IMG/VR virus record: IMGVR_UViG_3300028840_001395
Location: 371,805 to 435,804 of that record
Length of the DNA: 64,000 nt
Reading direction: 5' to 3' (one strand)
The notes below the pieces were generated by a model. That model saw only the letters and a list, made by a program, of their open reading frames with translations. It searched no databases and was not told the origin of the DNA. Shown in pieces: positions 19,859 to 55,507 of this stretch (its first letter is position 1; each line of letters begins with the position of its first letter). The position numbers and the translations under genes are program-made.

Positions 19859-22800
19859 CTAGAGGCTGCTCCGCAGGTGGAAGGTCAGGACGATGTACAG
19901 CAGCGGGAAGACCGGGCTGTAGTACGCCTCGACCTCGGCCACGGTCGGGTCGTCGGGAGCCACGTTGGCCTCGATGCCCGTGTAGGCCGTGATGATGTTC
20001 GCCGCCACCAGCGCCTTGAGCATCATGGACAGGTTGCCCTCGATCTGCGAGAGGACACCCGGCAGGAACTTGATGCCGATGAAGCGGTCGAGGGTGACCC
20101 GAGCCTGGCGCTGCACCTCGTCCGCGATGAGCACGATGGTCGGAACCTTGGTCAGGATGTTCGAGACATCCGTGGTCAGGCCGTGCCGCACCTTGAGGAA
20201 CGGAGGCTGATCCTCGACCACCGTGACGCCGTTGACCGCGAGCTGGTTCTGCTCCACCGCGTCGAGCACCCGAGCAAGCTGGGTGAACCCGACCAGACGC
20301 CGACCCGTCCACGGGGTCGCCACGTCGAAGTTCGGGGACACGACCGAACCCGTGAGCGCCGAGGCGATCATGGGGCCGTCCACCAGGTACTCCTTGGTGT
20401 TGTTCAGGGCGTCCGTCAGAGAGATGGTGGCGATGTCCGGGTACACGAGACGCATCCGGGGGTGCCCCAGAACCTGGGCCAGCGTGACCGCGTTCTCCAC
20501 CAGCGACCCCGCGTTCATGCCGATGATCGAGGTTCGCTCCGACTTGTAGCGGATGCTCGACATGATCTCGTTCGACTTCTTGAGGTACTGGTCAAGCTCG
20601 GTCGAATCGCCCCGCAGCGGCGTGATCATGTCGGGCTTGGCCTGGCCGGGCAGCGTGCCCTCCAGTTCATCGATGGCGTCCCGGTAGCTGGCCAGGGAGG
20701 CGTAGTTGCTCCCCTCCGCCCGCTGAACCTGGGTGATGCCCACCAGAATCGCACCGTTGAGGATGCTCAGGTAGGACGCGAGCGAGACCGGGTTGTCCGG
20801 GCTCACGACACCGTAGGCTTCCTCGATGGCTGCCATCTTGGTGAAGAAGGCCGTCCCGAAGTTCTGCTTCGTGTACGTGTAGGACACGTAGTAGAGGTCA
20901 CCGACGCTGGGCTCCAGACCACCGCGCTCGAAGGTCGAGACGATGGCCGTGTCACCCACGCCCACGTTCGCCGTGTTGGACACCCGCATGTCCAGCCCGT
21001 TGATGGCGTTGTGCGGGATGTTCGCGTCCGTCACGAAGGTCTTGCTCACGTTGATGCGGAACGTGGCGTTGCTACCCGTGGGGTAGGAAGTCCACGGCCC
21101 GGTCTGGTTGTCCGCCCAGTTGCGCGGGAGGATGGTGAAGGTCAGGCCCGTCACCGCATCCCGGTAGGTCTGTCCGACCACGCCGTCCTGGCCCACACCG
21201 TCGTTGAGGATCGAGGTGTTGGCCGACCCGGAGCCGTTGGCCACGTTGGAGACCACGAAGAAGCCGTCCAGGGCGTTCTCTCCCGTGGCTCCGTCACCAC
21301 TCTGGGCGTTGAGCCCGGTGAACGGGACGAGGGCGCTGTCGATGCTCTGGAAGGTGTCCCGCACCTCGATGCTGGAACCCTGGCCCAAGTCCCCGACCAG
21401 CGTGGGGGCATCCTGGAGATAGAGGAACTCCTTGCCAGTCTCGTCCTCCTCGACCGAGGCGATACCGACCGCAGCGAACAGGGCAGGCTGCGAGGCCGTG
21501 AAGTCGAGCAGCCAGGTGGCGAAGATGGCGGTACGGGAGGCCATGAGCGCCCCTGCCGTGGTCGCCGCCGGGACGGTGTTGCGAAGCGAAGTCGAGCCCG
21601 AGATGAACCCGAGGACGCCGTTGGCGCTCTCCTCACCGATGACGATGCGAGCCGACTCGTTGAACTGCCGTCCCGTGATCCGAATACCGGCACCTTCCTG
21701 CCGGACCATGCCCTCCGCGAACACAGAACCAGGCCCGCTCCAAGGCTGACCCGGAACCGTTCCCATCGCGTCGATGATCTGATCCATGACGGAGCCGTTG
21801 CCCGTCCCCGTCGCCGGGCCGAGGTCGGTCGCGTTGCCCGTGCCCGAGGCGGTGAATGTGACGTTCACGGGAACGCCGTCCACCTCGAAGGAGAACTTGT
21901 TGTTGGCTGCCCGCGTCCCGGAGCCATCGTAGAAGGTGACCTGGGGCTGTCCGTTGACCGCATTCTGGCCACCGGAGAAGCCCACAGAGCCCTTCGCCGT
22001 CGCCGCCTGCACGGTTGCCGCCCCCGCAGCGTAGGCCACGTCACCCGTCGAGAGAGCGGCCTTGGTGTTGCCCGCCTTGACCTCGACGTTGCCGAAGCTC
22101 TCGATGAAGTGGTGGGTCATCGTGCTGTTGGCCCCACCGCCCGGCAGGAGCCGGTTCCGCATGATGAGCCGGTCGAAGTTCTTGTTCGGCGGACCCAGAG
22201 CGGGAACCTCGTAGGTCTTGGCGACCGGCCCCTGGAGCAGAGCCGCCTGGCCCCCACCCACGGAAGCCGCACCATCGAAGCCCGCCAGAACCGCGAAGTC
22301 CGTGGCGAGACCACCGGCAGCGTTGACCACCTGGATGAAGCCCGAGGAGTCCACGCCCGGAAGCTGGAGGCGAAGCTCCAACTGGGCCGAGGAGTTGGCC
22401 ACGCACTCGACGCGCAGCCCAGCGTGGTTCGGGCTGCCCGGAACCGCAGCGGCGATGGCCGCGTCGATCTGGGTCTGAACCTCAGCGGCCAGCAGGATGC
22501 TGGTGCCGTAGGTGCCCGGAGTCAGCGTGATGTTCAGCGGAAGCACGCCGGACGTGTCACCCGTGTAGGTGATGGTCATGTCATCGAAGGCCCCACCCAC
22601 GACGGTCACGGGGGCATCGAAGGTCGTCGCACCCGGCATGGCACTCCGGGCGTCCGGCTTGAAGATGTAGTAGGGGTCGCCCGCCTGGATCGCGCCACCG
22701 GCCCAGTTGCCGGACACGGTGGCCTGGCCCGTGGTGCCGTCGTAGCTGGTCACGTCGAGGTACTGGCCCGCCGTGGCTGCCGCCGCCCCGTTGCCGACCA

Positions 22801-28298: not shown

Positions 28299-29321
28299 CT
28301 AGTCCTCCTCGTGCTCCTGCATGGCCTGGACGAGCAGGCCGTAGGCGACCGCGTTCAGCGGCTCCTTGGCGTGGCGGATCTCCGAGACCTCGATGGGGAA
28401 CTTCTTCCGGCGCTGCTCGAAGACCTTGGTGAAGAACTCCATGAATCCTCCGGCCTTGGAAGTCCCGCCGGACACGATCAGGGGGATGGGCTTGGACAGG
28501 GAGAACTCTCCCTCGATCTGCTTGAACCGGGCCGCGATCTGGTCGAGCACCGAGTCGATGAGCGCCTGGTAGTAGAAGGCGATGGCCTGGTGCATCCGGT
28601 CTTGGGGGTTGTTCAGATCCACCCCCTGCTCCTTGGCAGCACAGACACGGGCCTGCTTCGCCCCGATGGACTTGGCAGCCCCCGAGTCGATCCAGTCGCC
28701 GCCCTTGGCCACCGAGAAGGTCAGACCCTCGATGGTGTTGATGGACAGCGCCACGTTGGTCATGCCCGAGCCGAAGCTCATGGCGATACCGGAGAAGCCA
28801 TCCTTGGCGGTCTCGGAGTAGATGATGCCCATGCCCTCGTTGGAGGGGTAGGGCGTGTAGCCGCACTCCTTGACGATCTTCTCGAATACCATCCGGTGAT
28901 AGATGATGTCCTTGTCCGGCTGGTCGATGGGGTCGGCGGGCACCGAGAAGTAGCACGCCTCACCCTCGACCTGTGGAGGCCCGAGAACCTCCTTGATGAG
29001 CAGGCCCAGCACATCGAGGCTCTCCGCCTCGTCCGGGGACACGATGCCCGCCTTGAGGGGCCTCCGGGGGTCACGCCCGAACACGTTGGCGGTCTCCAGG
29101 GCTGCGTCACCCAGAATCAGGATGTCGTCCTCGCGGGCCACGAAGGAAGTGCCCGAGAGCTTGAGCATCTTCTTGGCGTTGGGCGGGAGATCGATGAACA
29201 GATCCCGCATCCGCTTGGTCTCGACACCCTTCGGCCCCCGCCGGGCTGAAACCAGGTTCATCGTGCCGATGTCGAGTCCGATACCGAGGGGAACCGCCAC
29301 CCCGTTTGTCTCTTCGCTCAT
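28299..29321 (-). CDS. Actin-like ATPase, volactin-like family
   Basis: Actin-fold motifs GLDIGTMN (phosphate 1), NEG (connect 1), SFGSGMTN (phosphate 2), GGDWID, SGGTS (adenosine) and AVAYG. PADPID..YH and RRP..G match recalled haloarchaeal volactin motifs. Confidence 0.85.
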   Translation of the reverse strand: MSEETNGVAVPLGIGLDIGTMNLVSARRGPKGVETKRMRDLFIDLPPNAKKMLKLSGTSFVAREDDILILGDAALETANVFGRDPRRPLKAGIVSPDEAESLDVLGLLIKEVLGPPQVEGEACYFSVPADPIDQPDKDIIYHRMVFEKIVKECGYTPYPSNEGMGIIYSETAKDGFSGIAMSFGSGMTNVALSINTIEGLTFSVAKGGDWIDSGAAKSIGAKQARVCAAKEQGVDLNNPQDRMHQAIAFYYQALIDSVLDQIAARFKQIEGEFSLSKPIPLIVSGGTSKAGGFMEFFTKVFEQRRKKFPIEVSEIRHAKEPLNAVAYGLLVQAMQEHEED

Positions 29322-36221: not shown

Positions 36222-37095
36222 ACGAAGACCATACCCGCCGGAAGACGCCCTGCCAACCCCGCTTGATGAGCTTCTTCTCGGACACCCGGAAGCGTGCCCA
36301 GTGCCGGGAGAACAGGCCATCGTCCGTCAGGAACAGGACAAGCTCCTCGACCACCTTCTCCACGTCACCCAGGTTCCGGCCCAGGGAGTGATACAGGTAG
36401 TCCAGCCCGCCCTGGGTCATGAGCGCCAGGAGGAACGCATTCTGGTTCACCTCGGCCCAGAAGTCTGGCAGGCCGGTCTTGATGGCCTTGAGCATCTCCA
36501 TCCAGATCTCCTGGGAGAGATAGAACACGTTCTCGTCCTCGTAGTCTGCCATCTCGCAGCCAGGGAACATGCCCTCCAAGGCCAGACCATTCATCTTCTT
36601 GTTGTGGCGCTTCCGGGTGAACTCGTCCTTGGCCCGCAGCGCGTCCTCGAAGGCCTGGGCGACCTCCTTCATGTTGTCCTGCTTCTGCTTGTAGCGAGGG
36701 TGTGCCTTCTCGATCTCCCGACGCTGGGACATGCACCCACCGCAGTCGTGGGCACACCCGTGAAGGGCATCCCATCGAGGACAGTCATCGGGAACGACTC
36801 TCTTCATCATTCCATCCGCGAGGATGGTCATCACCTTCTCATCGCAGGAGGCACAGGTATGAACCGTCGAAATGGAGCGAGTTTCGTCCTGACCCATCCG
36901 GGTCTCGTTCCAACGACTCTCCATGCAAGCGGTGAGGTGTTCACAATCCCGACAGGGGGCGAAGTCCTTTGCCCGATAGGACTCGATATTCTCGATACCC
37001 AGAATCTCCTCGACTGGCGGGCCGTTGTCGTCCGTAATGACCGCGTGATACCCGTCCTCGCACTTCACCCACAGCGTCTGCTCACTCAGACTCAT
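36205..37095 (-). CDS. Hypothetical Cys-rich protein
   Basis: 296 aa with multiple CxxC motifs, overlapping both neighbours. Confidence 0.7.
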   Translation of the reverse strand: MSLSEQTLWVKCEDGYHAVITDDNGPPVEEILGIENIESYRAKDFAPCRDCEHLTACMESRWNETRMGQDETRSISTVHTCASCDEKVMTILADGMMKRVVPDDCPRWDALHGCAHDCGGCMSQRREIEKAHPRYKQKQDNMKEVAQAFEDALRAKDEFTRKRHNKKMNGLALEGMFPGCEMADYEDENVFYLSQEIWMEMLKAIKTGLPDFWAEVNQNAFLLALMTQGGLDYLYHSLGRNLGDVEKVVEELVLFLTDDGLFSRHWARFRVSEKKLIKRGWQGVFRRVWSSYEAQV

Positions 37096-37777
37096 CAGCC
37101 TTGTCCCCCTCGGGAAGCCCCTTCTTCAGACGGGGATCCTGCGGCCCCTTGACGAACACGACCTCGACCCCGTGCTGTCGGAGGTAGTCCACACCGTTCC
37201 GACCCATGTAGCCTCCTCCCACGGCGAACACCTTGACGATGCCCGCATGGTGGATGAGCTTGGAGCACATGAGGCAGGGCTCACCCGTGACGAACAGCCA
37301 GGTTCCCTTGGTGGGAACACCATCGTGGGCGCAGTTGCAGATGATGTTCATCTCGGCGTGGACGCAACCCACCTCGACGTTCCCCCCAGAGGGGATGGGA
37401 GGATACTTGGCCAGGAGCAACTCACGGAAGGACTCGGCCTCGGCCTTGGGAAATCTCTTCCGCCCGCTGAAGTGGACGGCCTCGTCTCCCTTGGCCTCGA
37501 CGTAGAACTTGGGCTCCTCGGCGTCGGGTTCCTCATCGCCGTCGAACGCGACCTCCACATCGTCGGGGGTCAGACCGTCCCGGATGCAGTGATCTCCGCC
37601 ACAGAGGTCACCTCCTCCACGCGGGCCTCCATTGTATCCGTCCATGAGGATGGTGTTGCGGTCGGGGTTGATGAGCACGGCCCCGAACTTCCGGCGGGGA
37701 CAGTTCGATGCCTGGGCCAACGCGAGGCACTGCTTGACCCGGATTCTGAGATGCTTTTCTTTCACGGGAACCTCCAC
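37082..37777 (-). CDS. dCMP deaminase family protein with internal insertion
   Basis: S.C.RRKFGAV, GYNG, HAE.N and PCLMC zinc motifs. Confidence 0.85.
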   Translation of the reverse strand: MEVPVKEKHLRIRVKQCLALAQASNCPRRKFGAVLINPDRNTILMDGYNGGPRGGGDLCGGDHCIRDGLTPDDVEVAFDGDEEPDAEEPKFYVEAKGDEAVHFSGRKRFPKAEAESFRELLLAKYPPIPSGGNVEVGCVHAEMNIICNCAHDGVPTKGTWLFVTGEPCLMCSKLIHHAGIVKVFAVGGGYMGRNGVDYLRQHGVEVVFVKGPQDPRLKKGLPEGDKADESE

Positions 37778-37858
37778 TTCCGCTCTCTACTTCTACCCCA
37801 AAACCGACGCAATGGGGCCACCTTGAATCACCTCCCCCGAGAAATCGGCAGAAAGTGC

Positions 37859-37887
37859 TTGACAGGTCTGACGGCCTCCTGTAGAGT
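37859..37887 (+). promoter_or_regulatory. Sigma70-type promoter of the small RNA array
   Basis: TTGACA-N17-TAGAGT. Predicted start about 37894, at the 5' arm of RNA1. Confidence 0.7.
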
Positions 37888-37895
37888 GACCCATC

Positions 37896-38027
37896 GTGAG
37901 CACGAGAACTGTCGTGCCGGTTCAGTGACATGGCGCAGTTGGAAGCGCATCTGCCTTCAAGCAGAGTGTCGTAGGTTCAAGTCCTACTATCACTACCTTC
38001 TTCCGACACGCGACCTACTCGGCTCAC
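37896..38027 (+). ncRNA. Y-RNA-like RNA1: end-paired stem enclosing a complete tRNA cloverleaf
   Basis: GTGAGC/GCTCAC, CGAG/CTCG, GTCG/CGAC and CGG/CCG pairings flank the tRNA at 37924-37995. Carries the shared motif CGAGAACT-N9-GTTCAG. Confidence 0.65.
37924..37995 (+). tRNA. tRNA-like element with 6-nt anticodon loop (CTTCAA), no encoded CCA
   Basis: Acceptor AGTGACA/TATCACT (one mismatch), D arm GCGC-AGTTGGAA-GCGC, anticodon stem TCTGC/GCAGA, T arm GTAGG-TTCAAGT-CCTAC. Confidence 0.75.
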
Positions 38028-38029
38028 AA

Positions 38030-38111
38030 ACCCAACGGGAACTTGAGGGTTGGTTCAGGAAGGCTTCCACAAGGCCATGACAACCCCCGACGCTCTCCTT
38101 GCCCGTTGGTT
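38030..38111 (+). ncRNA. Y-RNA-like RNA2
   Basis: CCAACGGG/CCCGTTGG, GGGTTG/CAACCC and TCA/TGA stems. Motif CGGGAACT-N9-GTTCAG ... CCTTGCCCG. Confidence 0.6.
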
Positions 38112-38120
38112 CCCCAGCTA

Positions 38121-38150
38121 GGCTTACTCAGCCCAACCATAGAGTAGTCA
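38121..38150 (+). promoter_or_regulatory. Phage promoter motif GGCTTAC-N14-GAGTAGTCA
   Basis: Copy of the six-member motif upstream of RNA3 and the TROVE-like gene. Confidence 0.7.
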
Positions 38151-38151
38151 T

Positions 38152-38218
38152 TAGCTGCGGGGACTGTGCCGCCAGTTCAGCTTGGCAACGCTTCTGACGG
38201 CCATCCTGCCCGCAGCTA
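38152..38218 (+). ncRNA. Y-RNA-like RNA3
   Basis: TAGCTGCGGG/CCCGCAGCTA, GCCG/CGGC and CAG/CTG stems. Motif CGGGGACT-N9-GTTCAG ... CCTGCCCG. Confidence 0.6.
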
Positions 38219-38258
38219 TCATCCCCCAGGGGAGGGGGATTCGACCTGGAGGTGTCCC

Positions 38259-39866
38259 ATGACGAGCATGACCATCACGACCGCCGATGAGCTGACCCTG
38301 TGGCAGCCTCGGAGCGGAATCGCTCCCGCACAGGCGGGATCCGCCGTGTGCTCGTTCCTCGACACCGCGACCACGAGCATGGGTCGGGCGACCCACTACA
38401 ACACCCGGCAGGAGCAGCAGGACGCGGAGCTTGCCGCTCACGCGATGCTGCTGGATCTGAGCCGTGATCTGTACACCGTCCTCCTGGCGCTGCCGGGCGT
38501 GACCGACCGTTCGGTCCAGGTCGGAATGAAGAAGCTGCTCTCCACGCACCGGAACGGCACCAGCGACGAGTTCCTGACCCCGGCGATGGAGAGGGCCGTC
38601 CTCTACCACCTCATCCAGGCGCTTCCGGTGCCCAGGATGATGCGCTTGATGGACGCCTTCCGCTTCGGGAACCCGGAGCTTGGCGTCAGCCGGGCGAACA
38701 ACGCTCGGACGCGGAAGCTCATCCTGCGGACACTGCTCGGGTCTCCGCGCCTGCCCCTGTGGTCGGTCAAGTACCGCTCCAAGATGGCGTCGGCACTGAC
38801 CCACGCCTGGGGCAAGAGGATGGCCTCCATCCTGCGGGAGATCCTGCGGAAGGATGGTCGTCGGCTGACGGCCAAGGACAAGGCGATCCTGGGCCAGAAC
38901 CTCGACAAGTACTGCGAGGCGAAGCCGAAGCAGGCCCGTGAGTGCGTGGCCTTCATCCTGGGTGTCCGGTCGCGCCTGAGCGTCCCGCTGCTCAAGGCCT
39001 TCGAGGCTGCCAAGACCGACCTGTCCAAGGGGACGAAGCTGCCGTTGGAGGTTCTGGAGGGCATCCGCTCGACGTACCACGCGGACGTGAGCAAGGACGA
39101 GGTGCTCAAGCTGGTCGCCCGTGGCGGCAAGATGACTGACCACCAGAAGAAGGCCGTCCAGAAGCGGGCCAAGGCAGCGGATGTCGAGGTCAAGATGGAT
39201 CCGACCCGCTACGAGGCCGTCGAGCTGTATCTCTACGCCTTCGAGATGGGCCTCGATGAGTCCATCACCAAGGCCCTGGAAGAGAAGGCGGTCAAGGCCG
39301 CGTCGGCGTTCCCGGCTCGCTACGGAGACGTGGGCATCGTCGTGGACGCCTCGGCCTCGATGAAGGGCCACCAGACCCAGGCGCTGCGCCCGATGGCGGC
39401 GACCCTGGCCATGCGGGACATGCTCCAGCACGTCGGGGAGCGCCAGTCCACGCACTACGTGGGTGGGCAGATGGGCGACCTGGTGCGTCCGATGGGCGAC
39501 ACGGCCCTGGCGGACGGTCTGGTCGAGGCTCTGGAGGCCAGCCCGGACGTGGTGTTCGTGCTGTCTGATGGATACGAGAACGCTCCGGCAGGCCGCTTCT
39601 CGGAGGTCATGGAGCAGGTGCGGGAGATCGGCATCGAGACCCCGGTGTACCACCTGAACCCGGTCTTCGCAGCGGAGCGCACGGGTGTCCGGGAGCTTGC
39701 TCCCAGCTTCGTGCCGACCATGCCGGTCAAGTCCCCCACGGGACTCGGTACGACCATGCTCAGGGGCCTCATCGAGGCAGAGCCGGTCAAGGGCATCAAC
39801 TCCCTCGTGAGGATGGCCCTGATGAGCGGCCCGGTCGAGATGAAGTTCCTGGCCGAAGGAAAGTGA
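38259..39866 (+). CDS. Divergent Ro60/TROVE-like helical domain + vWA protein
   Basis: SD GGAGGTG before ATG 38259. Basic all-helical N-terminal ~360 aa, then vWA with DASASM and VFVLSDGYEN (Ro60-type architecture). vWA is secure; TROVE is inferred. Confidence 0.6.
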   Translation: MTSMTITTADELTLWQPRSGIAPAQAGSAVCSFLDTATTSMGRATHYNTRQEQQDAELAAHAMLLDLSRDLYTVLLALPGVTDRSVQVGMKKLLSTHRNGTSDEFLTPAMERAVLYHLIQALPVPRMMRLMDAFRFGNPELGVSRANNARTRKLILRTLLGSPRLPLWSVKYRSKMASALTHAWGKRMASILREILRKDGRRLTAKDKAILGQNLDKYCEAKPKQARECVAFILGVRSRLSVPLLKAFEAAKTDLSKGTKLPLEVLEGIRSTYHADVSKDEVLKLVARGGKMTDHQKKAVQKRAKAADVEVKMDPTRYEAVELYLYAFEMGLDESITKALEEKAVKAASAFPARYGDVGIVVDASASMKGHQTQALRPMAATLAMRDMLQHVGERQSTHYVGGQMGDLVRPMGDTALADGLVEALEASPDVVFVLSDGYENAPAGRFSEVMEQVREIGIETPVYHLNPVFAAERTGVRELAPSFVPTMPVKSPTGLGTTMLRGLIEAEPVKGINSLVRMALMSGPVEMKFLAEGK

Positions 39867-39876
39867 GAGGTGTGCT

Positions 39877-40869
39877 ATGCCGCGTAGGAACCAGGCGACA
39901 CTGACGGTCGAGGAGATCCTTCAGGGGACTCGCCTCGGGCGTACTCAGTCGGTCGGCCACATGGAGGTCATCCCGATCTTGGACGACGGGGACGCGGCGG
40001 ACGACACGTTCGCACCCCCATACTTCTCGGCGGGAACCCAGAACTACGGGAGCGTCCGTGTTCAGAACATGGATCCAGACCGTCCGACCATCGTTCCCAC
40101 GGGCTCGGGGTTCGTCACGAGTCAGCGGGCGCAGGATCACGCGACTTCGGGCGCGAAGTTCCTCAAGCCGGGCGAGAACAAGACCATCGAGGGTGCCATG
40201 TGCATCCAGGAGACTCAGGGTGGCCTCATCCGGCAGGAAGAGGACACGATGCTGGTGGTTCTCCCGGCATCGATGCGGGCGTCCATCCTCGCCATGCGGA
40301 ACGACGGGGACTACTCTCGGGCGTGGCCCTACATCCGGGAGTTCAACGCGAGCGTGGGCGTCCCCGGTGCGGGTGACCTCGTGAACTTCCTGCGGGAGTA
40401 CGACCGTCAGCTTGACGAGTTCGTGGCCGAGTTCGAGCTTCTGCCGAACCAGATCGGGGCCATCGTCCTGGTCGGGGGCCGGGTCGTGGGTGTCGAGCGT
40501 GCCCCGAACGTGCCCTTCTGGGAGAAGCTCTGGGTGCCGCTCGTCCGTGTCTGCTACGGCTCGCTGGCCTTGCGGACGGCCCGTGTGCTGGGTGACCAGC
40601 CGCCTGCGACGCGGACGGCGCTCACGGTACAGGACAAGTCGCTCGCTGGCATCAAGCAGGCCCTTCGGGACGCTCGCGTCAAGGCCGAGGGTCTGATCGA
40701 GGCCGCATACAACGAGGTTCGCTCGACGCCCCTGCTCTACGCAGAGGGTGCCGAGGGAAAGCTCGGCGGTGCGGAACTGTTCACGGTCGCCAACACCCGG
40801 TTGGCTGGCCAGATGGTTCGCCGTGGGGCGCTCGCGTCCTACGTGTCCCTCTGCGCCCCAGGGCTCTGA
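39877..40869 (+). CDS. ARPP/DUF6569-like domain protein
   Basis: 330 aa. MEVIPI, YGSVRV.N, AQDHA, CIQETQGG and FELLPNQIGAIVLVGG...GVE match recalled ARPP-family motifs. Confidence 0.6.
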   Translation: MPRRNQATLTVEEILQGTRLGRTQSVGHMEVIPILDDGDAADDTFAPPYFSAGTQNYGSVRVQNMDPDRPTIVPTGSGFVTSQRAQDHATSGAKFLKPGENKTIEGAMCIQETQGGLIRQEEDTMLVVLPASMRASILAMRNDGDYSRAWPYIREFNASVGVPGAGDLVNFLREYDRQLDEFVAEFELLPNQIGAIVLVGGRVVGVERAPNVPFWEKLWVPLVRVCYGSLALRTARVLGDQPPATRTALTVQDKSLAGIKQALRDARVKAEGLIEAAYNEVRSTPLLYAEGAEGKLGGAELFTVANTRLAGQMVRRGALASYVSLCAPGL

Positions 40870-40875
40870 GGGACT

Positions 40876-40925
40876 GGCTTCGGGGCCGGGACGGGACACT
40901 CCCGGTGCCCGAGGCCGCGTTCTTT
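40876..40925 (+). terminator. Terminator-like hairpin after the ARPP gene
   Basis: GGCTTCGGG-GCCGGGA/TCCCGGT-G-CCCGAGGCC followed by TTCTTT. Confidence 0.5.
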
Positions 40926-40935
40926 GAGAACTTCG

Positions 40936-40965
40936 GGCTTACTTCCCGCCCTGTGGGAGTAGTCT
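40936..40965 (+). promoter_or_regulatory. Phage promoter motif GGCTTAC-N14-GAGTAGTCT
   Basis: Copy of the six-member motif just upstream of the tRNA-like pair. Confidence 0.7.
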
Positions 40966-40982
40966 AGGAGAGGAGAACACGT

Positions 40983-41059
40983 CGGAGTGTACCTCAGTGG
41001 TAGAGGGCCTGGCTCTTGGGACCGGGCTGACATAGGTTCGAGCCCTATCACTCCGACCA
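40983..41059 (+). tRNA. tRNA-Pro-like gene with 9-nt anticodon loop (CTCTTGGGA), CCA encoded
   Basis: Acceptor CGGAGTG/CACTCCG + ACCA (Pro-type C1-G72, A73), D arm CCTC/GAGG, anticodon stem CCTGG/CCGGG, T arm ATAGG-TTCGAGC-CCTAT. Confidence 0.8.
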
Positions 41060-41071
41060 CATACGATGAGT

Positions 41072-41145
41072 TGCGGCGTAGCTCAGTGGTAGAGGGCCTG
41101 GCTCTTGGGACCGGGCTGACATAGGTTCGAGCCCTGCCGTCGTAA
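41072..41145 (+). tRNA. Chimeric tRNA-like gene: different acceptor stem, same 54-nt core with 9-nt loop
   Basis: Acceptor TGCGGCG/CGTCGTA. 41082-41135 is identical to 40993-41046. Mismatches at D and T stem junctions. No CCA. Confidence 0.65.
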
Positions 41146-41164
41146 CGCGATTCGGAGGCCCCAG

Positions 41165-42541
41165 ATGACCGACTTGGAGAAGCTGTATCAGTCCATCAAG
41201 GAGCGGTGGCGTCCGGAGGACGTGGCACAGGTCATCTACAACTCCCACGGTCGGCACATGAGCCCGTCCATGAAGCGGAACCTCGCGCGGGCTTCGGGGC
41301 GGGGTGAGGGCTACTCCTCGATGTCCCGCAAGTTCGCGGGAGCGAGCGGCCTGTCCAAGCAGATCGCCATCGCGGAGGTGCTGTTCCCGGACGTGCCGGT
41401 TCCGGTCAACCTGGGGGACGAGGACACCGTCTGGGACTACATCGAGCGTCTGGACGAGGCGCTGTGCAAGAGCGGTGAGAAGTCGGGTGACGACTTCGCG
41501 AACGACCGCCGGAACCGGCGTGGCCGGGCCGTCAAGGGTGTCCCGTGGCGCGGCCACCGGGCCTACAACAAGCGGTTCCGTCTCGTGACCCGCATGAAGG
41601 CCAAGTTCGGTCGCTGGGGCCGGAACAAGGAGCTGCGCGAGATGGCGCAGATCGCCAAGTCCCGGCTCGCCTGCCGCCTGTCCTGGGAGGAGTTCTCCCG
41701 TGACGGCAACACGGCCTGCTTCATCGCCTACATGACGGCCCGGCTGAACCTGCGTTCGGTGTTCACCTGCGGCAAGCAGGATCGGGCCTACGACAGCATC
41801 GCGGACATGCTGTTCAAGCGGCTGCGTCCGGGCCGGGCGAACTGGTACGCCGTGGCGCACGTCCACGTTCTGCCGGAGGTCACCAACCGCCTGACGGACG
41901 AGGAGAAGGGCAAGCTCATCGGTGTCTGGTTCGGCCAGATGAAGCGGTGCTGCGTCTACCTGGACGAGCTTCAGCAGACGCAGGACGTGGATCTCACCGG
42001 GTTGGTGGTTCACCGGGGCAACGACTCCTCGACCTGGAACGATGTCGCCGGGGCCTACAACAAGTGCCGGGACGGCTGGATCTCGACGCTCTACGCGATG
42101 GGCAAGGAGGCCCTGCTGGACAAGTTCGCTCCGCCGAAGATGCTGCGCCTGATGGCCGCTGACGTGGTCGCCTGGCACCGGAGCACCAACGGCCTGGAGC
42201 CGGACACCCTCGTCTGGAACGACCTGCCGAAGCCGTGGGAGGTTGTCCTGGGCCGGGAGTCCTGCACCCGGAAGGATATCGAGCGGGCCTGCCAGCGCCG
42301 GGGCATCAAGGGCAAGGGCTGGATCACCCCGCGAGCCAAGAAGGTCGCCCCGTTCAAGCCCACCCCGGAGCTTGTCCACGGCGTCGTAGTGGCTTCGCCG
42401 GAGCTTGCCGCCGTGCTCAAGAAGTGCGGCTACTTCTCCGGTCCGTCCAAGGGCGTCAAGGGCATCGCGGACGTGCCGATCTCCAAGCAGCAGGAGGGCG
42501 ACGTGACGGTCGTCCGCGACGCTCTGGAGCAGACCGCCTGA
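41165..42541 (+). CDS. Hypothetical basic helical protein (RPEDVA family) of the TROVE/ARPP locus
   Basis: SD GGAGG. 458 aa with strong coding bias. R/K/W-rich (YNKRFR, GNDSSTWN, LRLMAADV..WH, PTPELVHGV). Confidence 0.8.
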   Translation: MTDLEKLYQSIKERWRPEDVAQVIYNSHGRHMSPSMKRNLARASGRGEGYSSMSRKFAGASGLSKQIAIAEVLFPDVPVPVNLGDEDTVWDYIERLDEALCKSGEKSGDDFANDRRNRRGRAVKGVPWRGHRAYNKRFRLVTRMKAKFGRWGRNKELREMAQIAKSRLACRLSWEEFSRDGNTACFIAYMTARLNLRSVFTCGKQDRAYDSIADMLFKRLRPGRANWYAVAHVHVLPEVTNRLTDEEKGKLIGVWFGQMKRCCVYLDELQQTQDVDLTGLVVHRGNDSSTWNDVAGAYNKCRDGWISTLYAMGKEALLDKFAPPKMLRLMAADVVAWHRSTNGLEPDTLVWNDLPKPWEVVLGRESCTRKDIERACQRRGIKGKGWITPRAKKVAPFKPTPELVHGVVVASPELAAVLKKCGYFSGPSKGVKGIADVPISKQQEGDVTVVRDALEQTA

Positions 42542-46576: not shown

Positions 46577-47896
46577 CTACCCCACGAAACTCAAGATACG
46601 TCTCTCAACCTCTTGTGGATCAGATTTCACTTCTGACTCCCACACCACAAGACACTCTATCCCAATCTCCTTGAAAGCTGCAACAAGCTCCGACTCGTGA
46701 TCGAAAGGGGCCTTCCCAGTGAACATCCGGGAGTGCCAGAAGTTCCCGAAGACCTCCACGACCCTAGTGACACCCTTGAAAGGCTTCTTCGGGTCGAGGC
46801 CAGGGACGATGAAGTCCGGATTCTTGTACTGGCCCAACAAGGAGAGCCACTTCCAGAATTGACCGTCTCCCGTGAACATCATGCGGTCGCACATCGCAGC
46901 TACCCGACCTTCGAGAAGGTTTGGGCCTCTGGTGCAAAGGCCTGGGAATGGAGTGCCGTATCTCTGGATATTCGTCTGCCGTTGCTTCTCCCTGAACCCC
47001 TCAAGTTGAAGTGGGTGGTCAACCCCATACCGCTCCCGGAACACCTCCACGAGCCTGTCCCAGTGACCTTCAATAGCCCCAGGAAACTCCACCCCGAACC
47101 GCTCCTTGAGGGCCTCCCTGACGATCCTCTTTCCCTCCTCTGACGCGAAGAAATGACTCCCCCAGTTGGCCTCCATCGTCTCCAACTGTTTGCGCCTGAT
47201 CTCCGGGTCCAGGCACGTCCAGGGGACCCCATACCGCTCTTGGTTGGTCTTCTGCGCCTTGCCCCTTACTTCAGGAGAGCAGGAAGGAGACGGACCACCA
47301 TACCGATCCTCACAGGTGGCCCTGATCTGTTCTCTGCGCTCGGGCAGTGATAGGAGTTCCTCAGCCCCGTAGACCTCCAGATTCGTGGCCCTCGTAGATG
47401 CTCGTATCTCGGGCACCTGCTGAGGGTTGCCCACGCCATGTTCTCGCCGCCAATGCTCTCGTATCTTCTCCTTGACCTCGGGCTTGGCGAAAGGATTGTC
47501 CTGACCCCTCAAGACAGGGCGCTTCCCTTCCAAAGACGCCTGCACCTTCGCAAACGTCGAGGCTCCCCGACTGAATGGATTCTCGGCCCCGTATCTCTCC
47601 CGATTCGTAGCCGCCCTCTTGGCATCCGCCTCCGGTGTCCTCCGAGCATCCTCTACCCCGTATCTCGCCAGACTCGTGGACTTCCTCCGAGCATTGGCCA
47701 CAGCCTTCCTGTCCCGACTCTGCCAGACTTCACACGTCCGGCGGTGGCGCTTCATCTGGGTCAGACTCGTGGCCTCATGGCCACAGAGGCACGGGGGAAC
47801 CTTGGGAGAGGATTGCGGATGACACTTGGAAAGATGACGGGCGTTGAGCTTGTCGCCCTTGAACTCTCGATTACAGTAGGGGCAGGTTACTGACAT
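46577..47896 (-). mobile_element. Putative homing endonuclease: Zn fingers + ERYGV repeats + Vsr/PD-(D/E)XK domain
   Basis: CPYC..H..C and CLCG..H..C motifs. Roughly ten (TN)xERYGx repeats. C-terminal PDFIV...VEVFGNFWH...G..CLVVWESE. Atypical codon usage. Confidence 0.75.
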
Positions 47897-48848
47897 GCTC
47901 CATAACATAGCTCAGAAGATTGCCAAATGTCAAGAGGATGGGAATGACCACAAAATTCCTCGGGCTCAAGACACCCCGGCCCACGTAAGGGCCAAAGGCC
48001 GACCGGACTCCGCGACCGAAGCGTGGCTGCTGCAGGCCCTTGATGTACTTGACCGTCCGGGCCTTGGCCTCGGTCGCCTTGTCGAACTGGCTCTCGGCGT
48101 TCTGCTTGAGGCTCTCGTACTTGCTGGACTTCTCCAGGTTGAGGCTCACGCCACCGATGCTGTAGTCAAACTCGTCTGCGACCCAGTTGGCCGACAGGGC
48201 GAAGGTGGCGTGGGTGATGGCGTCCCAGAGGATTGCGGTGCGCCAGCAGGAGTACTCGTTGCAGAGCTTGTTGATGTTGTTCAGCGTCCCGCAGGTGTTC
48301 GGCGGGAACATGTTCCACCAGTCCATCGCCCGCTCGATGTACTCCAGCAGCTCCTCGTCCTCCCAGATCTGGCCGAAGATGCGGTTGTACTGGCCGATGT
48401 CCCCCTCATACTCCGGGGGCCGGAAGTGGTAGAACTTGTCGGGATTCTGGTCACGTAGCAGCATCCGCAGGCTGTGGATGAGTTCCTGCTCGCACTGGGT
48501 GTACGGCGAAGACCCGGTGCTCTGACAGGCGGACACGATGGCGAACTCCTGCACAACCATCTGGAGCGGCGAGTTGGCGTTCTCTCTGAAGTACCACCGG
48601 ATGCGATAGGTGCCCGCACAGGCTGTGCCTGGCACCATCAGAGAGGCGTAGTACTCGCCCACCTGGGGGTTGACCGGAGTGCGATGGTCGGAGCCGATGA
48701 GGACTTCCTGCTCCGGAGGGCCGGGATCCACGTAGTAGAGGGCGTAGTAGATCTCGGCGGCGTTCGAGGGGTGTCCGTGGCAGTTCTGGAGGAAGATATC
48801 CAGGTCGCCCCGCCCCAACGTCTGTCCTGGTGTGAAGGCGATGCCCAT
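47871..48848 (-). CDS. Putative head-tail adaptor/connector protein
   Basis: Ig-like N-terminus, then LRMLLRD...IWEDEELLEYIE..., YSIGGVSL..EKS.KY helical adaptor pattern. Confidence 0.55.
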   Translation of the reverse strand: MGIAFTPGQTLGRGDLDIFLQNCHGHPSNAAEIYYALYYVDPGPPEQEVLIGSDHRTPVNPQVGEYYASLMVPGTACAGTYRIRWYFRENANSPLQMVVQEFAIVSACQSTGSSPYTQCEQELIHSLRMLLRDQNPDKFYHFRPPEYEGDIGQYNRIFGQIWEDEELLEYIERAMDWWNMFPPNTCGTLNNINKLCNEYSCWRTAILWDAITHATFALSANWVADEFDYSIGGVSLNLEKSSKYESLKQNAESQFDKATEAKARTVKYIKGLQQPRFGRGVRSAFGPYVGRGVLSPRNFVVIPILLTFGNLLSYVMEHVSNLPLL

Positions 48849-50402: not shown

Positions 50403-53400
50403 CTAGGCGTTGCTGTACCGGAACTGAGGCATCCAGATGACGTTCGGGGTCTGGGTCGCGCCATCAGCGCCCACCAGAATCCCGAGCTGCCAGACATCCG
50501 TTTCCGGGGCGGACGGCGGGGACAGCGTGGCCTCACCCGGGTCAGTGGCCAGGTAGACCACCTGGCCGTTGTCCGCAGTGCCCGGAGCGGCGGCGAAGTA
50601 GACCGGCACCGGCATCCCGTGGATGGTGTTGATCTGGCACTCGGTTCCATCCTTGGCGACCACGACACCGAACACGTTGGCCTGGTCGGGAGCACCGATG
50701 CTGTGAGGGGCACCCGCGTCAGCCCGGAGGGCCTTGGTCTCACCACCCGAGTACTGGGCGTAGGCGATGTATCCGACCGCCAGGGCTCCGCCGTCACCGT
50801 CCGCCATCACCACACCGCCGCCAGCAGCGCCCGTGGTGGTGTTGACATCATCGCCCCTCGGAGTCCGAAGGAACTGCTCCAGCTCGACCTGCTTGGAGTT
50901 GGTCAGGGTGTTCAGGACGAGGTAGTCGTTCGTCCCGTCATCGAGCGTCAGAGCATCGGCATCGTTCGCGTCGAAGCTCCAGGTCGAGGAAGCCTCGATG
51001 TCCAGCGTGAGAGCCCCGCCCGTCAGCGTGATGGTAGAGGTGCCATCACCCAACGTGATCTCGGTGCCCGCGATGGCCACGTCCACGCCACCCGTGTCAC
51101 CGATGTCCACCGTGTCGTTCTCGGCGTCCGTCGAGAGGTAGTTCCCGGTGGTGCTGGTGACGGTGAAGTCCGCGAAGGTGCCGGTCTCGTCCAGGGTGAT
51201 GGCCAGGTCACCCTGCCCGTCGTCCAGGTCGATGGTGTTGCCCGCCTCGTAGGCCGCCTGAAGCGTCGTCCCGACCGCCGATGCAAGCTGCACCCAGGTG
51301 CCGGTGTCGTCGTAGTACCAGACCGACCCGTCACCCGTGGTGTCGTAGCGGATGTTGCCCGCCGTGGCGTTGTTGGTGCCACGGGGGAGGTTGAGGGCCG
51401 TGTTCACATACACGACACCGTTGGTGCCGGGGCTCAGGGTGATGTCGTCATCCTCGACCGTGAGGTTGAGGTCAGTCTTGGCGTAGATGTTGACGGTGCA
51501 ATCGCCCGTCCCGGTGCCACCCACCGAGGCAGAGGGGTTGACCGCACCGAGGTTCAGCTCATGGGCATCGTCGGTGTCGTTGGACATCGTGATGGTCATG
51601 TCCAGGCCGCTGAACACATTCAGGGCGTTGACCGCCGTGACCTCGGCCTGGGCAGCCGACATCAGGATGTCGTAGTCGAACCCGGCCCCGATGTTCAGTG
51701 CCGTCTTGTTGGCCGCCCCGACTCCACCTGCGACTGCCGAGAAGGCGTTGAGGTTGGCCGTCGCAGAGGTATCCCCCGCCACTCCGATCACGCTTCCGAC
51801 CACGGCGTCGATGCTCTGCGACCCGGTGAGGCCACCCGAGGTCAGCGTGGAGTTGATCCCGTGGGCTCCCGTGGCATCCGCAGCCGTGGTGCTGTTGGAG
51901 TAGATGGCCCTTTCACCCGTCTGGATCGTCCCGTAGGTGACGGTGAACGGGTAGATTGCCTCGATGTCGTCCGTGTTGGTGTCCACCCAGAGGATGTCCT
52001 CGGAACCGTCGTTGATCTTCCAGGCAGTTCCGCGACCGTCCTGTACAACCTCCCAGATGTCCGAGTCCGTGCCCGCCGAGAGCTTGAGGAAGTTGTCCGA
52101 GTTGATCTCCAGGTCGTTGCCCGGAGCGCCGCCCGAAGAGATCGTCAGCGCACCATCTGCGGTTACCGCCGTCCCGGTGAGGGCCAAGGCACCTGCGATA
52201 TCGACCTGGGTGGAGACATAGACGTTTCCGGGCCGGTAGTCGGCAGCCTGGCCGATGTCGTGTCCGCCATCGGCATCGAAGTAGAGGTGCGACCCGTTGA
52301 GGTAGGTCTCCTCGTTGTCCGGGGCGAGGTAGATGGCACCATCCATCGCGCTCAGGAGCATGTTGGTGCCAGCCGCAATCGTCTGAGCATCTTCGCCACC
52401 GCTGTTGCCGTCCAGCAGGATGTGGGTGAAGTACTGGGCATCGTTGGTGGGATTGGCCAGCATCAAACCAGCGCCAAAAGCGCCTCCACCGTTCGCCCCC
52501 ATGAACACCGAACCGAGGCCGATTACCGCCGCCCCTGCCACGTCAGAGGCATCCCCCTCGAACGAAGCCGCCACCGCGATGGCTGTCGCACCATCATCTC
52601 CGACACCATCACCAGCAAGACCACCCGAGGTCATGCTGGTGAGGGAAACAAACTGCCTCTCACCGATGGCGACGTTCCGGCCCACCTCACCAGTGGCGGT
52701 GAGAGCGGCGTCATTGGCTCCGTCAAGGGAGTCGGTGACCATCAAGCCACCGCGAACCTGAGTGCCGATCAGCGTGGCCGTGGCCGAAGCCTCGCCCAGC
52801 CGGAGGTAGGATGCCTCCCCATCGGTGACGATGTACTCGTTGGACGAACCGAGAGAAGCGCCCTCACCGCGAACGATGAAGTCGGCTCCCGGGTTGGTCT
52901 CGTCAATGATGAACTCCAGGTCACCCGTCGAGTCCGCGAGGGTGATGGTGTTCCCGACCTCGTAGGCCGTCTGGAGGCCACCCGATGTTCCAGGGGTGAG
53001 CTGGGTGACGTTCCCCGACTCATCCATGTAGTACAGCTCGGTGTTGCCGGAGCCGTCATCCTTGGTGTAGAGGACGCCCGTGTTGGCCACGTTCGTCGGG
53101 TCGGCACCTTCCCGCAGGAAGCTGTGGACGCCGTGGATCTCGCCCCAGTAGTTCGTGGAGTTACCGAAGGAGTAGGTGCCCACGCCGTCCGGGAGGACTT
53201 CAAGGTCACCACCACCGCAGGTCAGGAGGATGTCCGTGGTCGCCTGAAGCTCCAGGCGACCGTCCGTGTTGATGACACCCTTGGTGGTCTCATGCGACAT
53301 GCCGATGGCGACCGAGTGCGTGGAGTCGAGGGCACTCACGGTGCCCGCCGTCCCGCTCGGCCCCCGAACCTGGACGTAGCCGTTGTTCGACAGGAGCTTG

Positions 53401-55388: not shown

Positions 55389-55507
55389 CCCTCGACTCCT
55401 GCATCCTGACCCCAACACGGGGGGATCGCCAACGTGACAGCGAAGCTCAAGATGTAATCGAATCGAGGGAGGCACACGCGCACGCGCGCCTCTATCTATT
55501 ATGGGGG

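What the first reader, a model, noticed from the sequence alone, without database searches (positions are those of the whole stretch)
37896..38027. Whole, non-permuted tRNA with a 6-nt anticodon loop mounted on a Y-like stem
Seen: a complete cloverleaf (37924-37995) with loop CTTCAA, one base short, and no CCA. Its flanks pair to extend beyond the acceptor end. Established: in bacterial YrlA RNAs the long stem replaces the anticodon arm of a permuted tRNA module. Here the anticodon arm is instead kept and displayed distally while the acceptor end is blocked. Inference: a non-aminoacylated bait for anticodon-recognising enzymes or a tether. If processed out, the loop could present UCA (opal) or UUC (Glu), or promote -1 slippage.
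Basis: partly seen in the sequence, partly recalled or inferred. Interest (0 to 1): 0.8.

Follow-up and report, generated by a model that had tools for sequence, protein, structure and literature searches.

The report
Phage Y-like RNA carrying a tRNA
The odd tRNA is real, but it is most likely the tRNA-shaped head of a Y-RNA-like small RNA that partners a Ro60-like protein encoded just downstream in a 436-kb phage, a known kind of RNA-protein particle in a new arrangement, not a decoding tRNA.

Summary
Positions 37924-37995 form a canonical cloverleaf (Rfam 57 bits) with a 6-nt anticodon loop, CUUCAA. ARAGORN calls a 2-nt anticodon. The same loop appears in contigs from three public runs and in two database assemblies of the same phage.

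The flanks at 37896-37923 and 37996-38027 pair into a two-helix stem. An invariant 5' RACU internal loop separates the helices. Across 31 related loci, 13 of 14 stem pairs covary (89% paired, against 66% when shuffled).

The window comes from a 436-kb phage contig. The gene 260 nt downstream (38259-39866) folds as Ro60/TROVE+VWA, with Z 16.4 to Thermus phage Ro60. Two more stem modules without a tRNA lie between the RNA and that gene.

This matches Ro60 with upstream Y RNAs. The non-permuted topology and a 6-nt "anticodon" loop both have a precedent in Deinococcus Yrn1.

The tRNA head evolves faster than neutral sites. In the closest relative it is no longer detectable as a tRNA, so decoding is unlikely to be its selected role.

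I rate this a new variant of a known kind. A second module in the same operon, a 458-aa protein with tRNA-likes whose loops are 6-9 nt, is widespread in bacteria. I found no description of it.

The parts
37859..37887 (+). Sigma-70-type promoter: TTGACA, 17-nt spacer, TAGAGT. The predicted start falls about 37893-37896, at the first base of the stem.
   Evidence: 10 of 12 matches; 0.3 expected in shuffles. Conserved in the relative L003.
37896..37923 (+). Y1 5' strand. It holds outer helix H1 (GUGAGC-a-CGAG, 37896-37906), the invariant internal loop AACU (37907-37910), helix H2 (37911-37920) and the linker UUC.
   Evidence: The loop is AACU or GACU in 30 of 33 loci. This stretch is 92% identical to L003, against 80% at neutral sites.
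37924..37995 (+). Complete, non-permuted tRNA cloverleaf forming the head of Y1. The elbow signature is intact (U8, A14, GG in the D loop, UUCAAGU T loop). It is followed by A73-C-C-U.
37955..37960 (+). 6-nt anticodon loop CUUCAA. This equals the usual tRNA-Gly(UCC) loop CUUCCAA minus one C.
   Evidence: A loose end in run X4 shows UCUGC-CUUCCAA-GCAGA in another organism.
37996..38027 (+). Y1 3' strand: linker ACCUUCUU, H2' (CCGACACGCGAC, 38003-38014), loop CUA, and H1' (CUCG-GCUCAC, 38018-38027).
38032..38109 (+). Y2, a second stem module without a tRNA. H1 is CCAACGGG/CCCGUUGG, followed by the AACU loop, H2 and a small variable apical hairpin.
   Evidence: The stems are conserved but the apex differs in L003 and L095.
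38152..38218 (+). Y3, a third stem module. H1 is UAGCUGCGGG/CCCGCAGCUA, followed by the GACU loop, H2 and an apical loop. It lies in the 5' untranslated region of the Ro-like gene.
   Evidence: z -3.9.
38259..39866 (+). Ro60-like protein (HEAT-repeat ring plus VWA domain with a full MIDAS motif), 535 aa. The true start is ATG 38259, behind a GGAGGUG ribosome-binding site. The longer ORF from 38166 is an artefact.
39877..40869 (+). ARPP-1 domain protein. It follows the Ro-like gene in nearly every related locus long enough to show the downstream gene.
40983..41146 (+). Two tRNA-like genes of a different family. Both have the anticodon arm CCUGG-CUCUUGGGA-CCGGG with a 9-nt loop. They belong with the next gene. 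Whether they work together with Y1 and the Ro-like protein is unknown.
41165..42541 (+). 458-aa protein of an uncharacterised family, always found next to tRNA-likes with the GG-CUC...CCG arm.

Best explanation
The 132-nt element at 37896-38027 is the first of three tandem Y-RNA-like small RNAs. They are transcribed from their own promoter just upstream of a phage gene for a Ro60-like protein.

Shown:
- The 5' and 3' ends pair into a conserved two-helix stem.
- An invariant RACU internal loop sits on the 5' strand of that stem.
- The far end of the stem carries a complete tRNA cloverleaf.
- The downstream protein has the Ro60 fold.

Inferred by analogy with Ro60/Y RNA particles:
- The stem is the docking site for the Ro-like ring.
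- The L-shaped tRNA head is the exposed module. It recruits or occupies a tRNA-binding partner, such as a host exoribonuclease like PNPase, RNase P or the CCA-adding enzyme, the adjacent ARPP-1 protein, or a tRNA-targeting nuclease.

The head is not selected for decoding. Its loop and arms change faster than neutral sites between close relatives, and the 6-nt loop is one outcome of that turnover.

The operon probably serves RNA surveillance or repair, or counter-defence, during infection. Related loci place the same gene pair inside large phage tRNA arrays.
For: 1. Protein partner.
- The AF2 model of 38166-39866 has pLDDT 80.6.
- The top 8 Foldseek PDB hits are all Ro60/TROVE over about 570 columns, probability 1.0.
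- VIA-align gives Z 16.4 to Thermus phage Ro60 (9KOP) and Z 13.9-14.6 to five Xenopus and human Ro60 entries over about 400 residues. VWA-only hits reach at most Z 11.9.
- The MIDAS residues DxSxS...T...D are invariant in 22 homologues.

2. Position.
- The RNA lies on the same strand as the gene. Its stem ends about 230 nt before the gene's start codon (the tRNA part about 260 nt), as with known Y RNAs, which lie within 4 kb of Ro60 on the same strand (PMC4201824).
- Thermus phage phiLo has two Y-like RNAs upstream of its Ro60 gene (PMC12135203).

3. Conservation of the stem.
- 31 loci, 14 pairs, 89% paired, 13 pairs with double changes, covariation score 0.70 against 0.27 when shuffled.
- Cognate flanks pair at -24.0 kcal/mol, non-cognate flanks at -14.0.

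4. Specificity.
- 64% of tRNAs within 750 nt upstream of the Ro-like gene have this stem plus the GRAC motif. Only 7% of the other tRNAs in the same loci do, and most of those lie 1-3.5 kb upstream of the gene.

5. Modularity.
- Y2 and Y3 repeat the plan H1, RACU loop, H2 without a tRNA. This parallels YrlA and YrlB.

6. The head is not a decoder.
- U33 is present in 77%, against 93% in neighbouring tRNAs.
- All 7 Ser or Leu 'anticodons' sit on short class-I bodies.
- 16% have A34, and 4 of 35 have loops that are not 7 nt.
- Between the window and L003 the head differs at 47% of positions, against 20% at 4-fold sites (p = 9e-6). The leader differs at 8%.
- The L003 head is a cloverleaf that neither ARAGORN nor Rfam recognises as a tRNA.
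- A third close relative has the loop CUUGUAA on the same stem.
Against: - No binding or expression data exist. The complex prediction was not run by the tool, and no RNA reads were examined.
- The conserved loop motif (G)RACU is not the known Ro60-binding motif (GGUCCGA in animals; GNCGAA or CGAA in bacteria and phiLo).
- No Rfam family other than tRNA matched meaningfully.
- Neither Pfam TROVE nor PDB sequence profiles detect the protein. The Ro60 assignment rests on a predicted fold with TM about 0.45.
- 31 of 35 heads keep a 7-nt loop with a purine at position 37, and 8 of 35 encode CCA. Some may therefore still be processed and used as tRNAs.
- No terminator separates the modules from the gene. 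They could act in cis as an mRNA leader.
Confidence: 0.6

Rival explanations
1. It is an ordinary phage tRNA gene, here crippled by a 1-nt deletion. The pairing flanks are only a precursor-processing or stability structure. The RNA is cut out by RNase P and RNase Z, and the stem has no function of its own.
For: The cloverleaf and elbow are canonical. Related loci lie inside large phage tRNA arrays, and most heads have 7-nt loops with R37. 8 of 35 encode CCA. M. smegmatis YrlA is itself cut by RNase P.
Against: The stem with the RACU loop is specific to tRNAs next to the Ro-like gene: 64% against 7%. It is more conserved than neutral sites, while the tRNA itself is less conserved. The same stem plan recurs twice without any tRNA. 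Anticodons do not fit the tRNA class. The L003 head is not a recognisable tRNA.
Confidence: 0.13
2. The three modules are a cis-acting leader of the Ro-like/ARPP-1 operon mRNA. They would serve for autoregulation by the Ro-like protein or for transcript stability, not as free small RNAs.
For: There is one strong promoter and no predicted terminator between 37860 and 42700 on the + strand. Y3 lies within 41 nt of the ribosome-binding site.
Against: Known Y RNAs are also co-transcribed with rsr and then processed. In many relatives the stem-mounted tRNAs lie 1-3.5 kb upstream of the gene, with other genes or tRNAs in between. That spacing does not suit a leader.
Confidence: 0.12
3. The stem-blocked tRNA is a decoy that soaks up anticodon-recognising enzymes, such as host anticodon nucleases, whether or not the Ro-like protein is involved.
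For: The head and loop change faster than neutral sites among close relatives while the anticodon stem stays fixed. Loop length and sequence vary across the family. The same operon carries a second set of tRNA-likes with hypervariable loops of 6-9 nt.
Against: No nuclease or target has been identified. Fast change could equally be relaxed constraint or cassette exchange. D and T arms change as well, not only the loop. In the closest relative (L003) the T and D loops that form the tRNA elbow are degenerate, a poor property for a tRNA decoy.
Confidence: 0.1

Closest known systems
Deinococcus radiodurans Yrn1 (Y RNA of Rsr/Ro60)
   Same: It is encoded beside a Ro60 gene, and its 5' and 3' ends form the Ro-binding stem. 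Its tRNA-like part is modelled in the normal, non-permuted order, with a 5-bp 'anticodon' stem and a 6-nt loop (PMC4201824).
   Different: Yrn1 lacks a variable arm and a clear D arm, and tRNA finders do not recognise it. The window's RNA has a complete cloverleaf scoring 57 bits. The conserved stem motif differs: RACU loop here, GGUCCGA-like there.
YrlA-type bacterial and mycobacteriophage Y RNAs
   Same: It is a stem plus a tRNA-mimicking module next to Ro60, often accompanied by a second, shorter Y RNA (YrlB), as with Y2 and Y3 here. M. smegmatis YrlA is cut by RNase P and receives CCA.
   Different: In YrlA the tRNA module is permuted. The stem enters at the anticodon-arm position and the acceptor stem is capped by a loop. 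Here the stem enters at the acceptor end and the anticodon arm is displayed. The GNCGAA motif is absent.
Thermus phage phiLo Ro60 with Yrl1 and Yrl2 (PDB 9KOP; PMC12135203)
   Same: It is a phage-encoded Ro60 with several Y-like RNAs directly upstream of its gene. Its protein is the best structural match to the window's protein (Z 16.4). With host PNPase it forms a RYPER-like complex.
   Different: The phiLo Yrls are stem-bulge-stem RNAs with a CGAA motif and no tRNA cloverleaf. The window's protein belongs to a family that Pfam TROVE does not detect and that is always paired with ARPP-1.
Frameshift-suppressor and other tRNAs with abnormal anticodon loops (sufD, SufB2, yeast mitochondrial tRNA-Thr1)
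   Same: The anticodon loop is not 7 nt.
   Different: Those are processed, charged, decoding tRNAs with enlarged loops. This RNA has a shortened loop, no identity elements matching its loop, and a conserved extra stem. I found no evidence of decoding.

Membership tests
Canonical decoding tRNA | Cloverleaf with the tertiary signature of D and T loops | tested here: met
   Rfam tRNA 57 bits over the full model, plus an ARAGORN call. U8, A14, GG and UUCAAGU are read directly from the sequence.
Canonical decoding tRNA | 7-nt anticodon loop with U33 and a 3-nt anticodon | tested here: not met
   The loop is the 6-nt CUUCAA, and ARAGORN reports a 2-nt anticodon. The loop is reproduced in independent contigs.
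Canonical decoding tRNA | Anticodon under decoding constraint, consistent with body class and conserved among close relatives | tested here: not met
   Three close relatives carry CUUCAA, UACGCAA and CUUGUAA on the same stem. In the family, all 7 class-II anticodons sit on class-I bodies and U33 is present in 77%.
Canonical decoding tRNA | Processed to about 75 nt, CCA-ended and aminoacylated | not testable with these tools
   No RNA data were available. The gene encodes ACCU after the acceptor stem.
Y RNA (Ro60-associated small RNA) | Encoded close to a Ro60 gene, on the same strand | tested here: met
   The stem ends about 230 nt upstream of a gene whose product has the Ro60 fold. The same arrangement occurs in dozens of related loci.
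Y RNA (Ro60-associated small RNA) | 5' and 3' ends pair into a long stem interrupted by a conserved bulge or internal loop | tested here: met
   Helices H1 and H2 covary, and the RACU loop is invariant.
Y RNA (Ro60-associated small RNA) | Known Ro60-binding sequence in the stem (GGUCCGA in animals; GNCGAA or CGAA in bacteria and phage) | tested here: not met
   The stem reads CGAG-AACU and the family consensus is YGRG-RACU. No Rfam family other than tRNA matched meaningfully.
Y RNA (Ro60-associated small RNA) | Physically bound by the Ro60 protein | not testable with these tools
YrlA subfamily | Permuted tRNA-like module: the stem enters at the anticodon-arm position and the acceptor stem is capped by a loop | tested here: not met
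   The cloverleaf is in the normal order and the stem extends from the acceptor end.
Ro60/TROVE protein (for the product of 38259-39866) | HEAT-repeat ring followed by a VWA domain with a MIDAS motif | tested here: met
   The predicted fold aligns over about 400 residues with Ro60 structures, Z 13.9-16.4. The Foldseek top 8 hits are all Ro60. DxSxS, T and D are invariant. This rests on a predicted model.
Ro60/TROVE protein (for the product of 38259-39866) | Sequence membership in Pfam TROVE | tested here: not met
   No TROVE hit at E <= 0.01, only a weak VWA_CoxE hit. A profile search of PDB sequences found nothing.

The most novel reading that the evidence does not exclude
The operon may hold two separate RNA-protein modules that both display fast-evolving mimics of the tRNA anticodon arm.

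1. A Ro60-like/ARPP-1 pair with tRNAs mounted on a docking stem.
2. A 458-aa protein of unmatched fold with tRNA-likes. These have an invariant GG-CUC...CCG arm, and their loops vary from 6 to 9 nt.

In this reading the variable loops are specificity determinants. They would act as decoys, sensors or guides in conflicts over tRNA cleavage and repair. The 458-aa/tRNA-like pair, found alone in many bacterial phyla, would then be an undescribed RNA-dependent system.
Probability: 0.2. Interest if true: 0.85.

Novelty: new variant of a known kind. Interest (0 to 1): 0.6.

Why it matters
Ro60/Y RNA particles are known from animals, about 5% of bacteria and a few phages. How their distal modules choose partners remains open.

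This finding adds three things:
- It defines a large clade of Ro60-like proteins that domain databases do not detect. The clade occurs in very large phages and is always paired with ARPP-1.
- The Y-like RNAs of this clade carry whole tRNAs in the normal orientation.
- The docking stem is under purifying selection, while the tRNA head turns over faster than neutral sites.

That gives a clean natural system for asking what the tRNA mimic binds, and whether phages use Ro particles to manage or protect tRNA pools.

It also warns annotators that some "odd tRNAs" in phage genomes, with 6-nt loops, A34 or wrong-class anticodons, are Y-RNA heads and not decoders or evidence of recoding.

Tried and rejected
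- **tRNA deaminase idea.** The divergent gene 37082-37777 is a deaminase. It matches dCMP/dCTP deaminase models (ComEB, anti-phage dCTP deaminase), not TadA. It is absent from most related loci, so I dropped it.
- **Similarity searches.** BLAST against phage and plasmid collections found no close relatives, only tRNA-sized or short hits. PHROGs, NCBIfam and PADLOC gave nothing for the Ro-like, ARPP-1 or 458-aa proteins.
- **Rfam at permissive thresholds.** No family other than tRNA matched meaningfully on the window or on L003.
- **String-based module finder.** It was only about 3.7-fold enriched upstream of the Ro-like gene and missed Y1 because of its bulged A. I replaced it with alignment-based covariation.
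- **Protein-RNA complex prediction.** The tool did not run the job, so it is no evidence either way.
- **Function of the 458-aa protein.**
  - Foldseek PDB gave no hit with E <= 0.001, and VIA-wide gave Z <= 6.3.
  - A PDB profile search, the ESM Atlas and neighbour clustering were all uninformative.
  - The one lead is an AlphaFold DB entry where a similar fold is fused to an RNA ligase domain.
- **Literature.** Searches for natural 8- or 9-nt anticodon loops in bacteria found no description of that module.

Full report
**What is in the sequence**

ARAGORN finds three tRNA-like genes in the 64-kb window, all abnormal. The one at 37924-37997(+) has a 2-nt anticodon. The two at 40983-41059 and 41072-41146 have oversized loops. 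Rfam's tRNA model matches all three, and the first scores 57 bits over the full model.

Read directly, the first is a textbook cloverleaf:
- acceptor AGUGACA/UAUCACU, with one C.A mismatch
- D arm with a GG in the loop
- anticodon stem UCUGC/GCAGA
- variable region GUGUC
- T arm with the loop UUCAAGU

The exception is the anticodon loop, CUUCAA (37955-37960), which has six bases. After the discriminator A come CC and then U, so no CCA is encoded.

A consensus promoter (TTGACA, 17 nt, TAGAGT; 37859-37887) places the transcript start at about the first base of the flank. The flanks 37896-37923 and 37996-38027 pair with each other.

**Is the 6-nt loop an artefact?**

Logan contigs from three public runs span 37000-41022 with no difference and no gap, at word depth 12-19. 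Two of the runs may be one data set. The IMG/VR and JGI records of the same phage (435,804 and 435,783 bp; possibly the same sample) also carry the loop.

Contigs hide rare variants and raw reads were not available. The consensus is nevertheless reproducible.

The loop equals the common tRNA-Gly(UCC) loop CUUCCAA minus one C. A loose end in run X4 shows UCUGC-CUUCCAA-GCAGA in another organism.

**Context**

The window is part of a 436-kb viral contig with few recognisable genes. The local gene order is:
- dCMP/dCTP-deaminase-like gene on the minus strand
- promoter and the tRNA element
- a 535-aa protein (38259-39866; start fixed by homologue lengths and a GGAGGUG site)
- an ARPP-1 protein
- two tRNA-likes
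- a 458-aa protein

The 535-aa protein has no Pfam TROVE hit and no PDB sequence hit. Its AlphaFold model, however, has pLDDT 80.6, and its top eight Foldseek matches are all Ro60/TROVE structures over about 570 columns.

VIA-align gives Z 16.4 to Thermus phage Ro60 (9KOP). It gives Z 13.9-14.6 to five Xenopus and human Ro60 entries over about 400 residues. Hits to VWA domains alone score clearly lower. The MIDAS residues are invariant in the family. I conclude that this is a divergent Ro60-like protein, with the caveat that the call rests on a predicted fold.

**Comparative evidence for the RNA**

A metagenome scan with the Ro-like family returned 80 loci. Nearly every locus long enough to show the downstream gene has ARPP-1 directly after the Ro-like gene. 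Many loci lie inside large phage tRNA arrays.

In 36 non-redundant loci a tRNA lies 100-500 nt upstream on the same strand. Its flanks always fold the same way:
- an outer helix H1 ending in G-C
- a 5' internal loop reading AACU or GACU in 30 of 33 loci
- a second helix H2
- short linkers, then the tRNA

On a MAFFT alignment of 31 such elements, RNAalifold recovers H1, H2 and the tRNA stems. For the 14 flank pairs alone, one search gives:
- 89.3% of cells paired, against 66.4% in shuffles (0 of 500 shuffles reach it) and about 40% with slid partners
- 13 pairs with changes on both sides
- a covariation score of 0.70, against 0.27 in shuffles

Cognate flanks pair at -24.0 kcal/mol and non-cognate flanks at -14.0.

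The stem plus motif marks 64% of tRNAs within 750 nt upstream of the Ro-like gene. It marks only 7% of the other tRNAs in these loci, and most of those exceptions lie 1-3.5 kb upstream of the gene and carry odd anticodons.

Two further modules with the same plan, H1 then RACU loop then H2, but with small non-tRNA tops, follow at 38032-38109 and 38152-38218.

**The head is not behaving like a decoder**

Across the family the loops are mostly 7 nt with a purine at position 37. However:
- U33 is present in 77%, against 93% of neighbouring tRNAs.
- All seven Ser or Leu anticodons sit on short class-I bodies.
- 16% have A34.
- Four of 35 have loops that are not 7 nt.

Between the window and its closest relative L003, Ro-like identity is 93% and 4-fold sites differ at 20%. 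The promoter and leader differ at 8%. The tRNA body differs at 47%, p = 9e-6 against neutral sites.

The L003 head still folds as a cloverleaf, but with a 4-nt D loop and a non-canonical 6-nt T loop. Neither ARAGORN nor Rfam recognises it as a tRNA.

A third close relative keeps the same anticodon stem with the loop CUUGUAA. The apex of Y2 varies in the same way. The docking stem is therefore conserved while the tops turn over by fast substitution or cassette exchange.

**Comparison with what is known**

Bacterial and phage Y RNAs are encoded within 4 kb of Ro60 on the same strand and contain tRNA-like modules (PMC4201824).

The same paper, however, models D. radiodurans Yrn1 in the non-permuted orientation, with a 5-bp "anticodon" stem and a 6-nt loop. 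The topology and even the loop length therefore have a precedent.

Thermus phage phiLo encodes a Ro60 with two Y-like RNAs upstream of its gene, and with host PNPase these form a RYPER-like complex (PMC12135203). Jumbo-phage surveys note TROVE proteins with tRNA-like partners (PMC7824862).

New here:
- a complete, detectable tRNA as the head
- the RACU stem motif in place of GNCGAA or CGAA
- a Ro-like family invisible to domain databases
- the fixed pairing with ARPP-1, which is not among the ARPP neighbourhoods listed in PMC9503650
- the faster-than-neutral turnover of the head

**Mechanism, with steps marked**

Shown: the promoter, the stem, the conserved loop, the tRNA head, the Ro60-like fold of the neighbouring gene, and the family-wide linkage.

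Inferred: the Ro-like ring binds the stem, and the L-shaped head tethers or occupies a tRNA-binding partner. RNase P may cut at the 5' end of the head while the stem holds the pieces together, as in M. smegmatis YrlA. The particle would act in RNA surveillance or repair, or in counter-defence, during infection.

The bait idea is compatible with the fast turnover but is untested. I put 0.6 on the Y-RNA-like reading.

**The neighbouring module**

The 458-aa protein belongs to a family of more than 900 members spread over many bacterial phyla and large phages. In 58 of 60 genome loci, 1-3 tRNA-like genes lie directly beside it on the same strand.

Among 134 distinct sequences these RNAs share almost invariant D and T arms and a GG-CUC...CCG anticodon arm. 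The rest of the loop varies in sequence and in length: 6 nt in 3, 7 nt in 49, 8 nt in 70 and 9 nt in 12. No other protein is a conserved neighbour.

The protein's fold matches nothing in the PDB. One AlphaFold DB entry fuses a similar fold to an RNA ligase domain. I found no description of this pairing in the literature searched.

It may be the more novel object in this window, but it lies outside the finding I was given and I followed it only partly.

Noticed in passing
window 40983-42541 (+); loci L006-L090: A 458-aa protein family with no Pfam hit and no PDB fold match is spread across many bacterial phyla and large phages. It is almost always directly flanked by 1-3 tRNA-like genes. These have near-invariant D and T arms and a GG-CUC...CCG anticodon arm, with the loop tail varying in sequence and in length (6-9 nt). 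No other protein is a conserved neighbour. I found no published description.
   Followed up: partly
window 40993-41046 and 41082-41135: The two tRNA-likes share an identical 54-nt core, whereas in relatives the second copy has a different loop (CUCUUUCAU). This looks like gene conversion from copy 1 into copy 2. It leaves mismatches in the D and T stems of copy 2, whose Rfam score falls to 33.7 bits, and it breaks the short-read contigs at this spot.
   Followed up: partly
window 39877-40869 (+) and about 80 related loci: An ARPP-1 domain gene follows the Ro60-like gene in nearly every related locus long enough to show it. This pairing is not among the ARPP neighbourhoods (ARG systems, HIRAN, WYL, deacetylase) described in PMC9503650.
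   Followed up: partly
L003:2558-2627, and L095:7-80: In the closest relatives the stem is nearly identical but the tRNA head is replaced. L003 has a cloverleaf with degenerate D and T loops that tRNA finders miss. L095 has a head that ARAGORN calls 'tRNA-Thr(UGU)'. The apex of the second module differs among all three as well.
   Followed up: yes
AlphaFold DB entry A0A0G3GV89: A 608-aa protein annotated as containing an RNA ligase domain matches the 458-aa protein's fold over its whole length (E 6e-24). This hints that the family works on RNA ends.
   Followed up: no
window 28299-29321 (-): There is a strong match to Pfam Volactin (E 7e-75), an actin-family protein described from haloarchaea, here in a large phage genome.
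   Followed up: no
window 584-5935, 19859-25165, 50403-55475, 8254-11280, 60006-62930 (all -): Five very large ORFs (974-1783 aa) with good coding statistics have no Pfam hit at all. A VIT+VWA protein lies at 16139-18916.
   Followed up: no
window 46577-47908 (-): This ORF matches DUF7487 and PHROG homing-endonuclease families, so it may be a mobile endonuclease gene.
   Followed up: no
window 37082-37777 (-): A dCMP/dCTP-deaminase-like gene is transcribed divergently from the Y-like RNA promoter. It matches anti-phage dCTP deaminase and ComEB models below their cut-offs. It is probably nucleotide metabolism, unrelated to the RNA.
   Followed up: partly
loci L111, L113, L122, L127, L128, L131, L133, L134, L155, L157, L167: Many stem-mounted tRNAs near Ro-like genes carry A34 'anticodons' (AUC, ACU, ACA, AAC, AGU, AUU) that are rare in real bacterial tRNAs. 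Automated annotation would report these as unusual tRNAs.
   Followed up: partly
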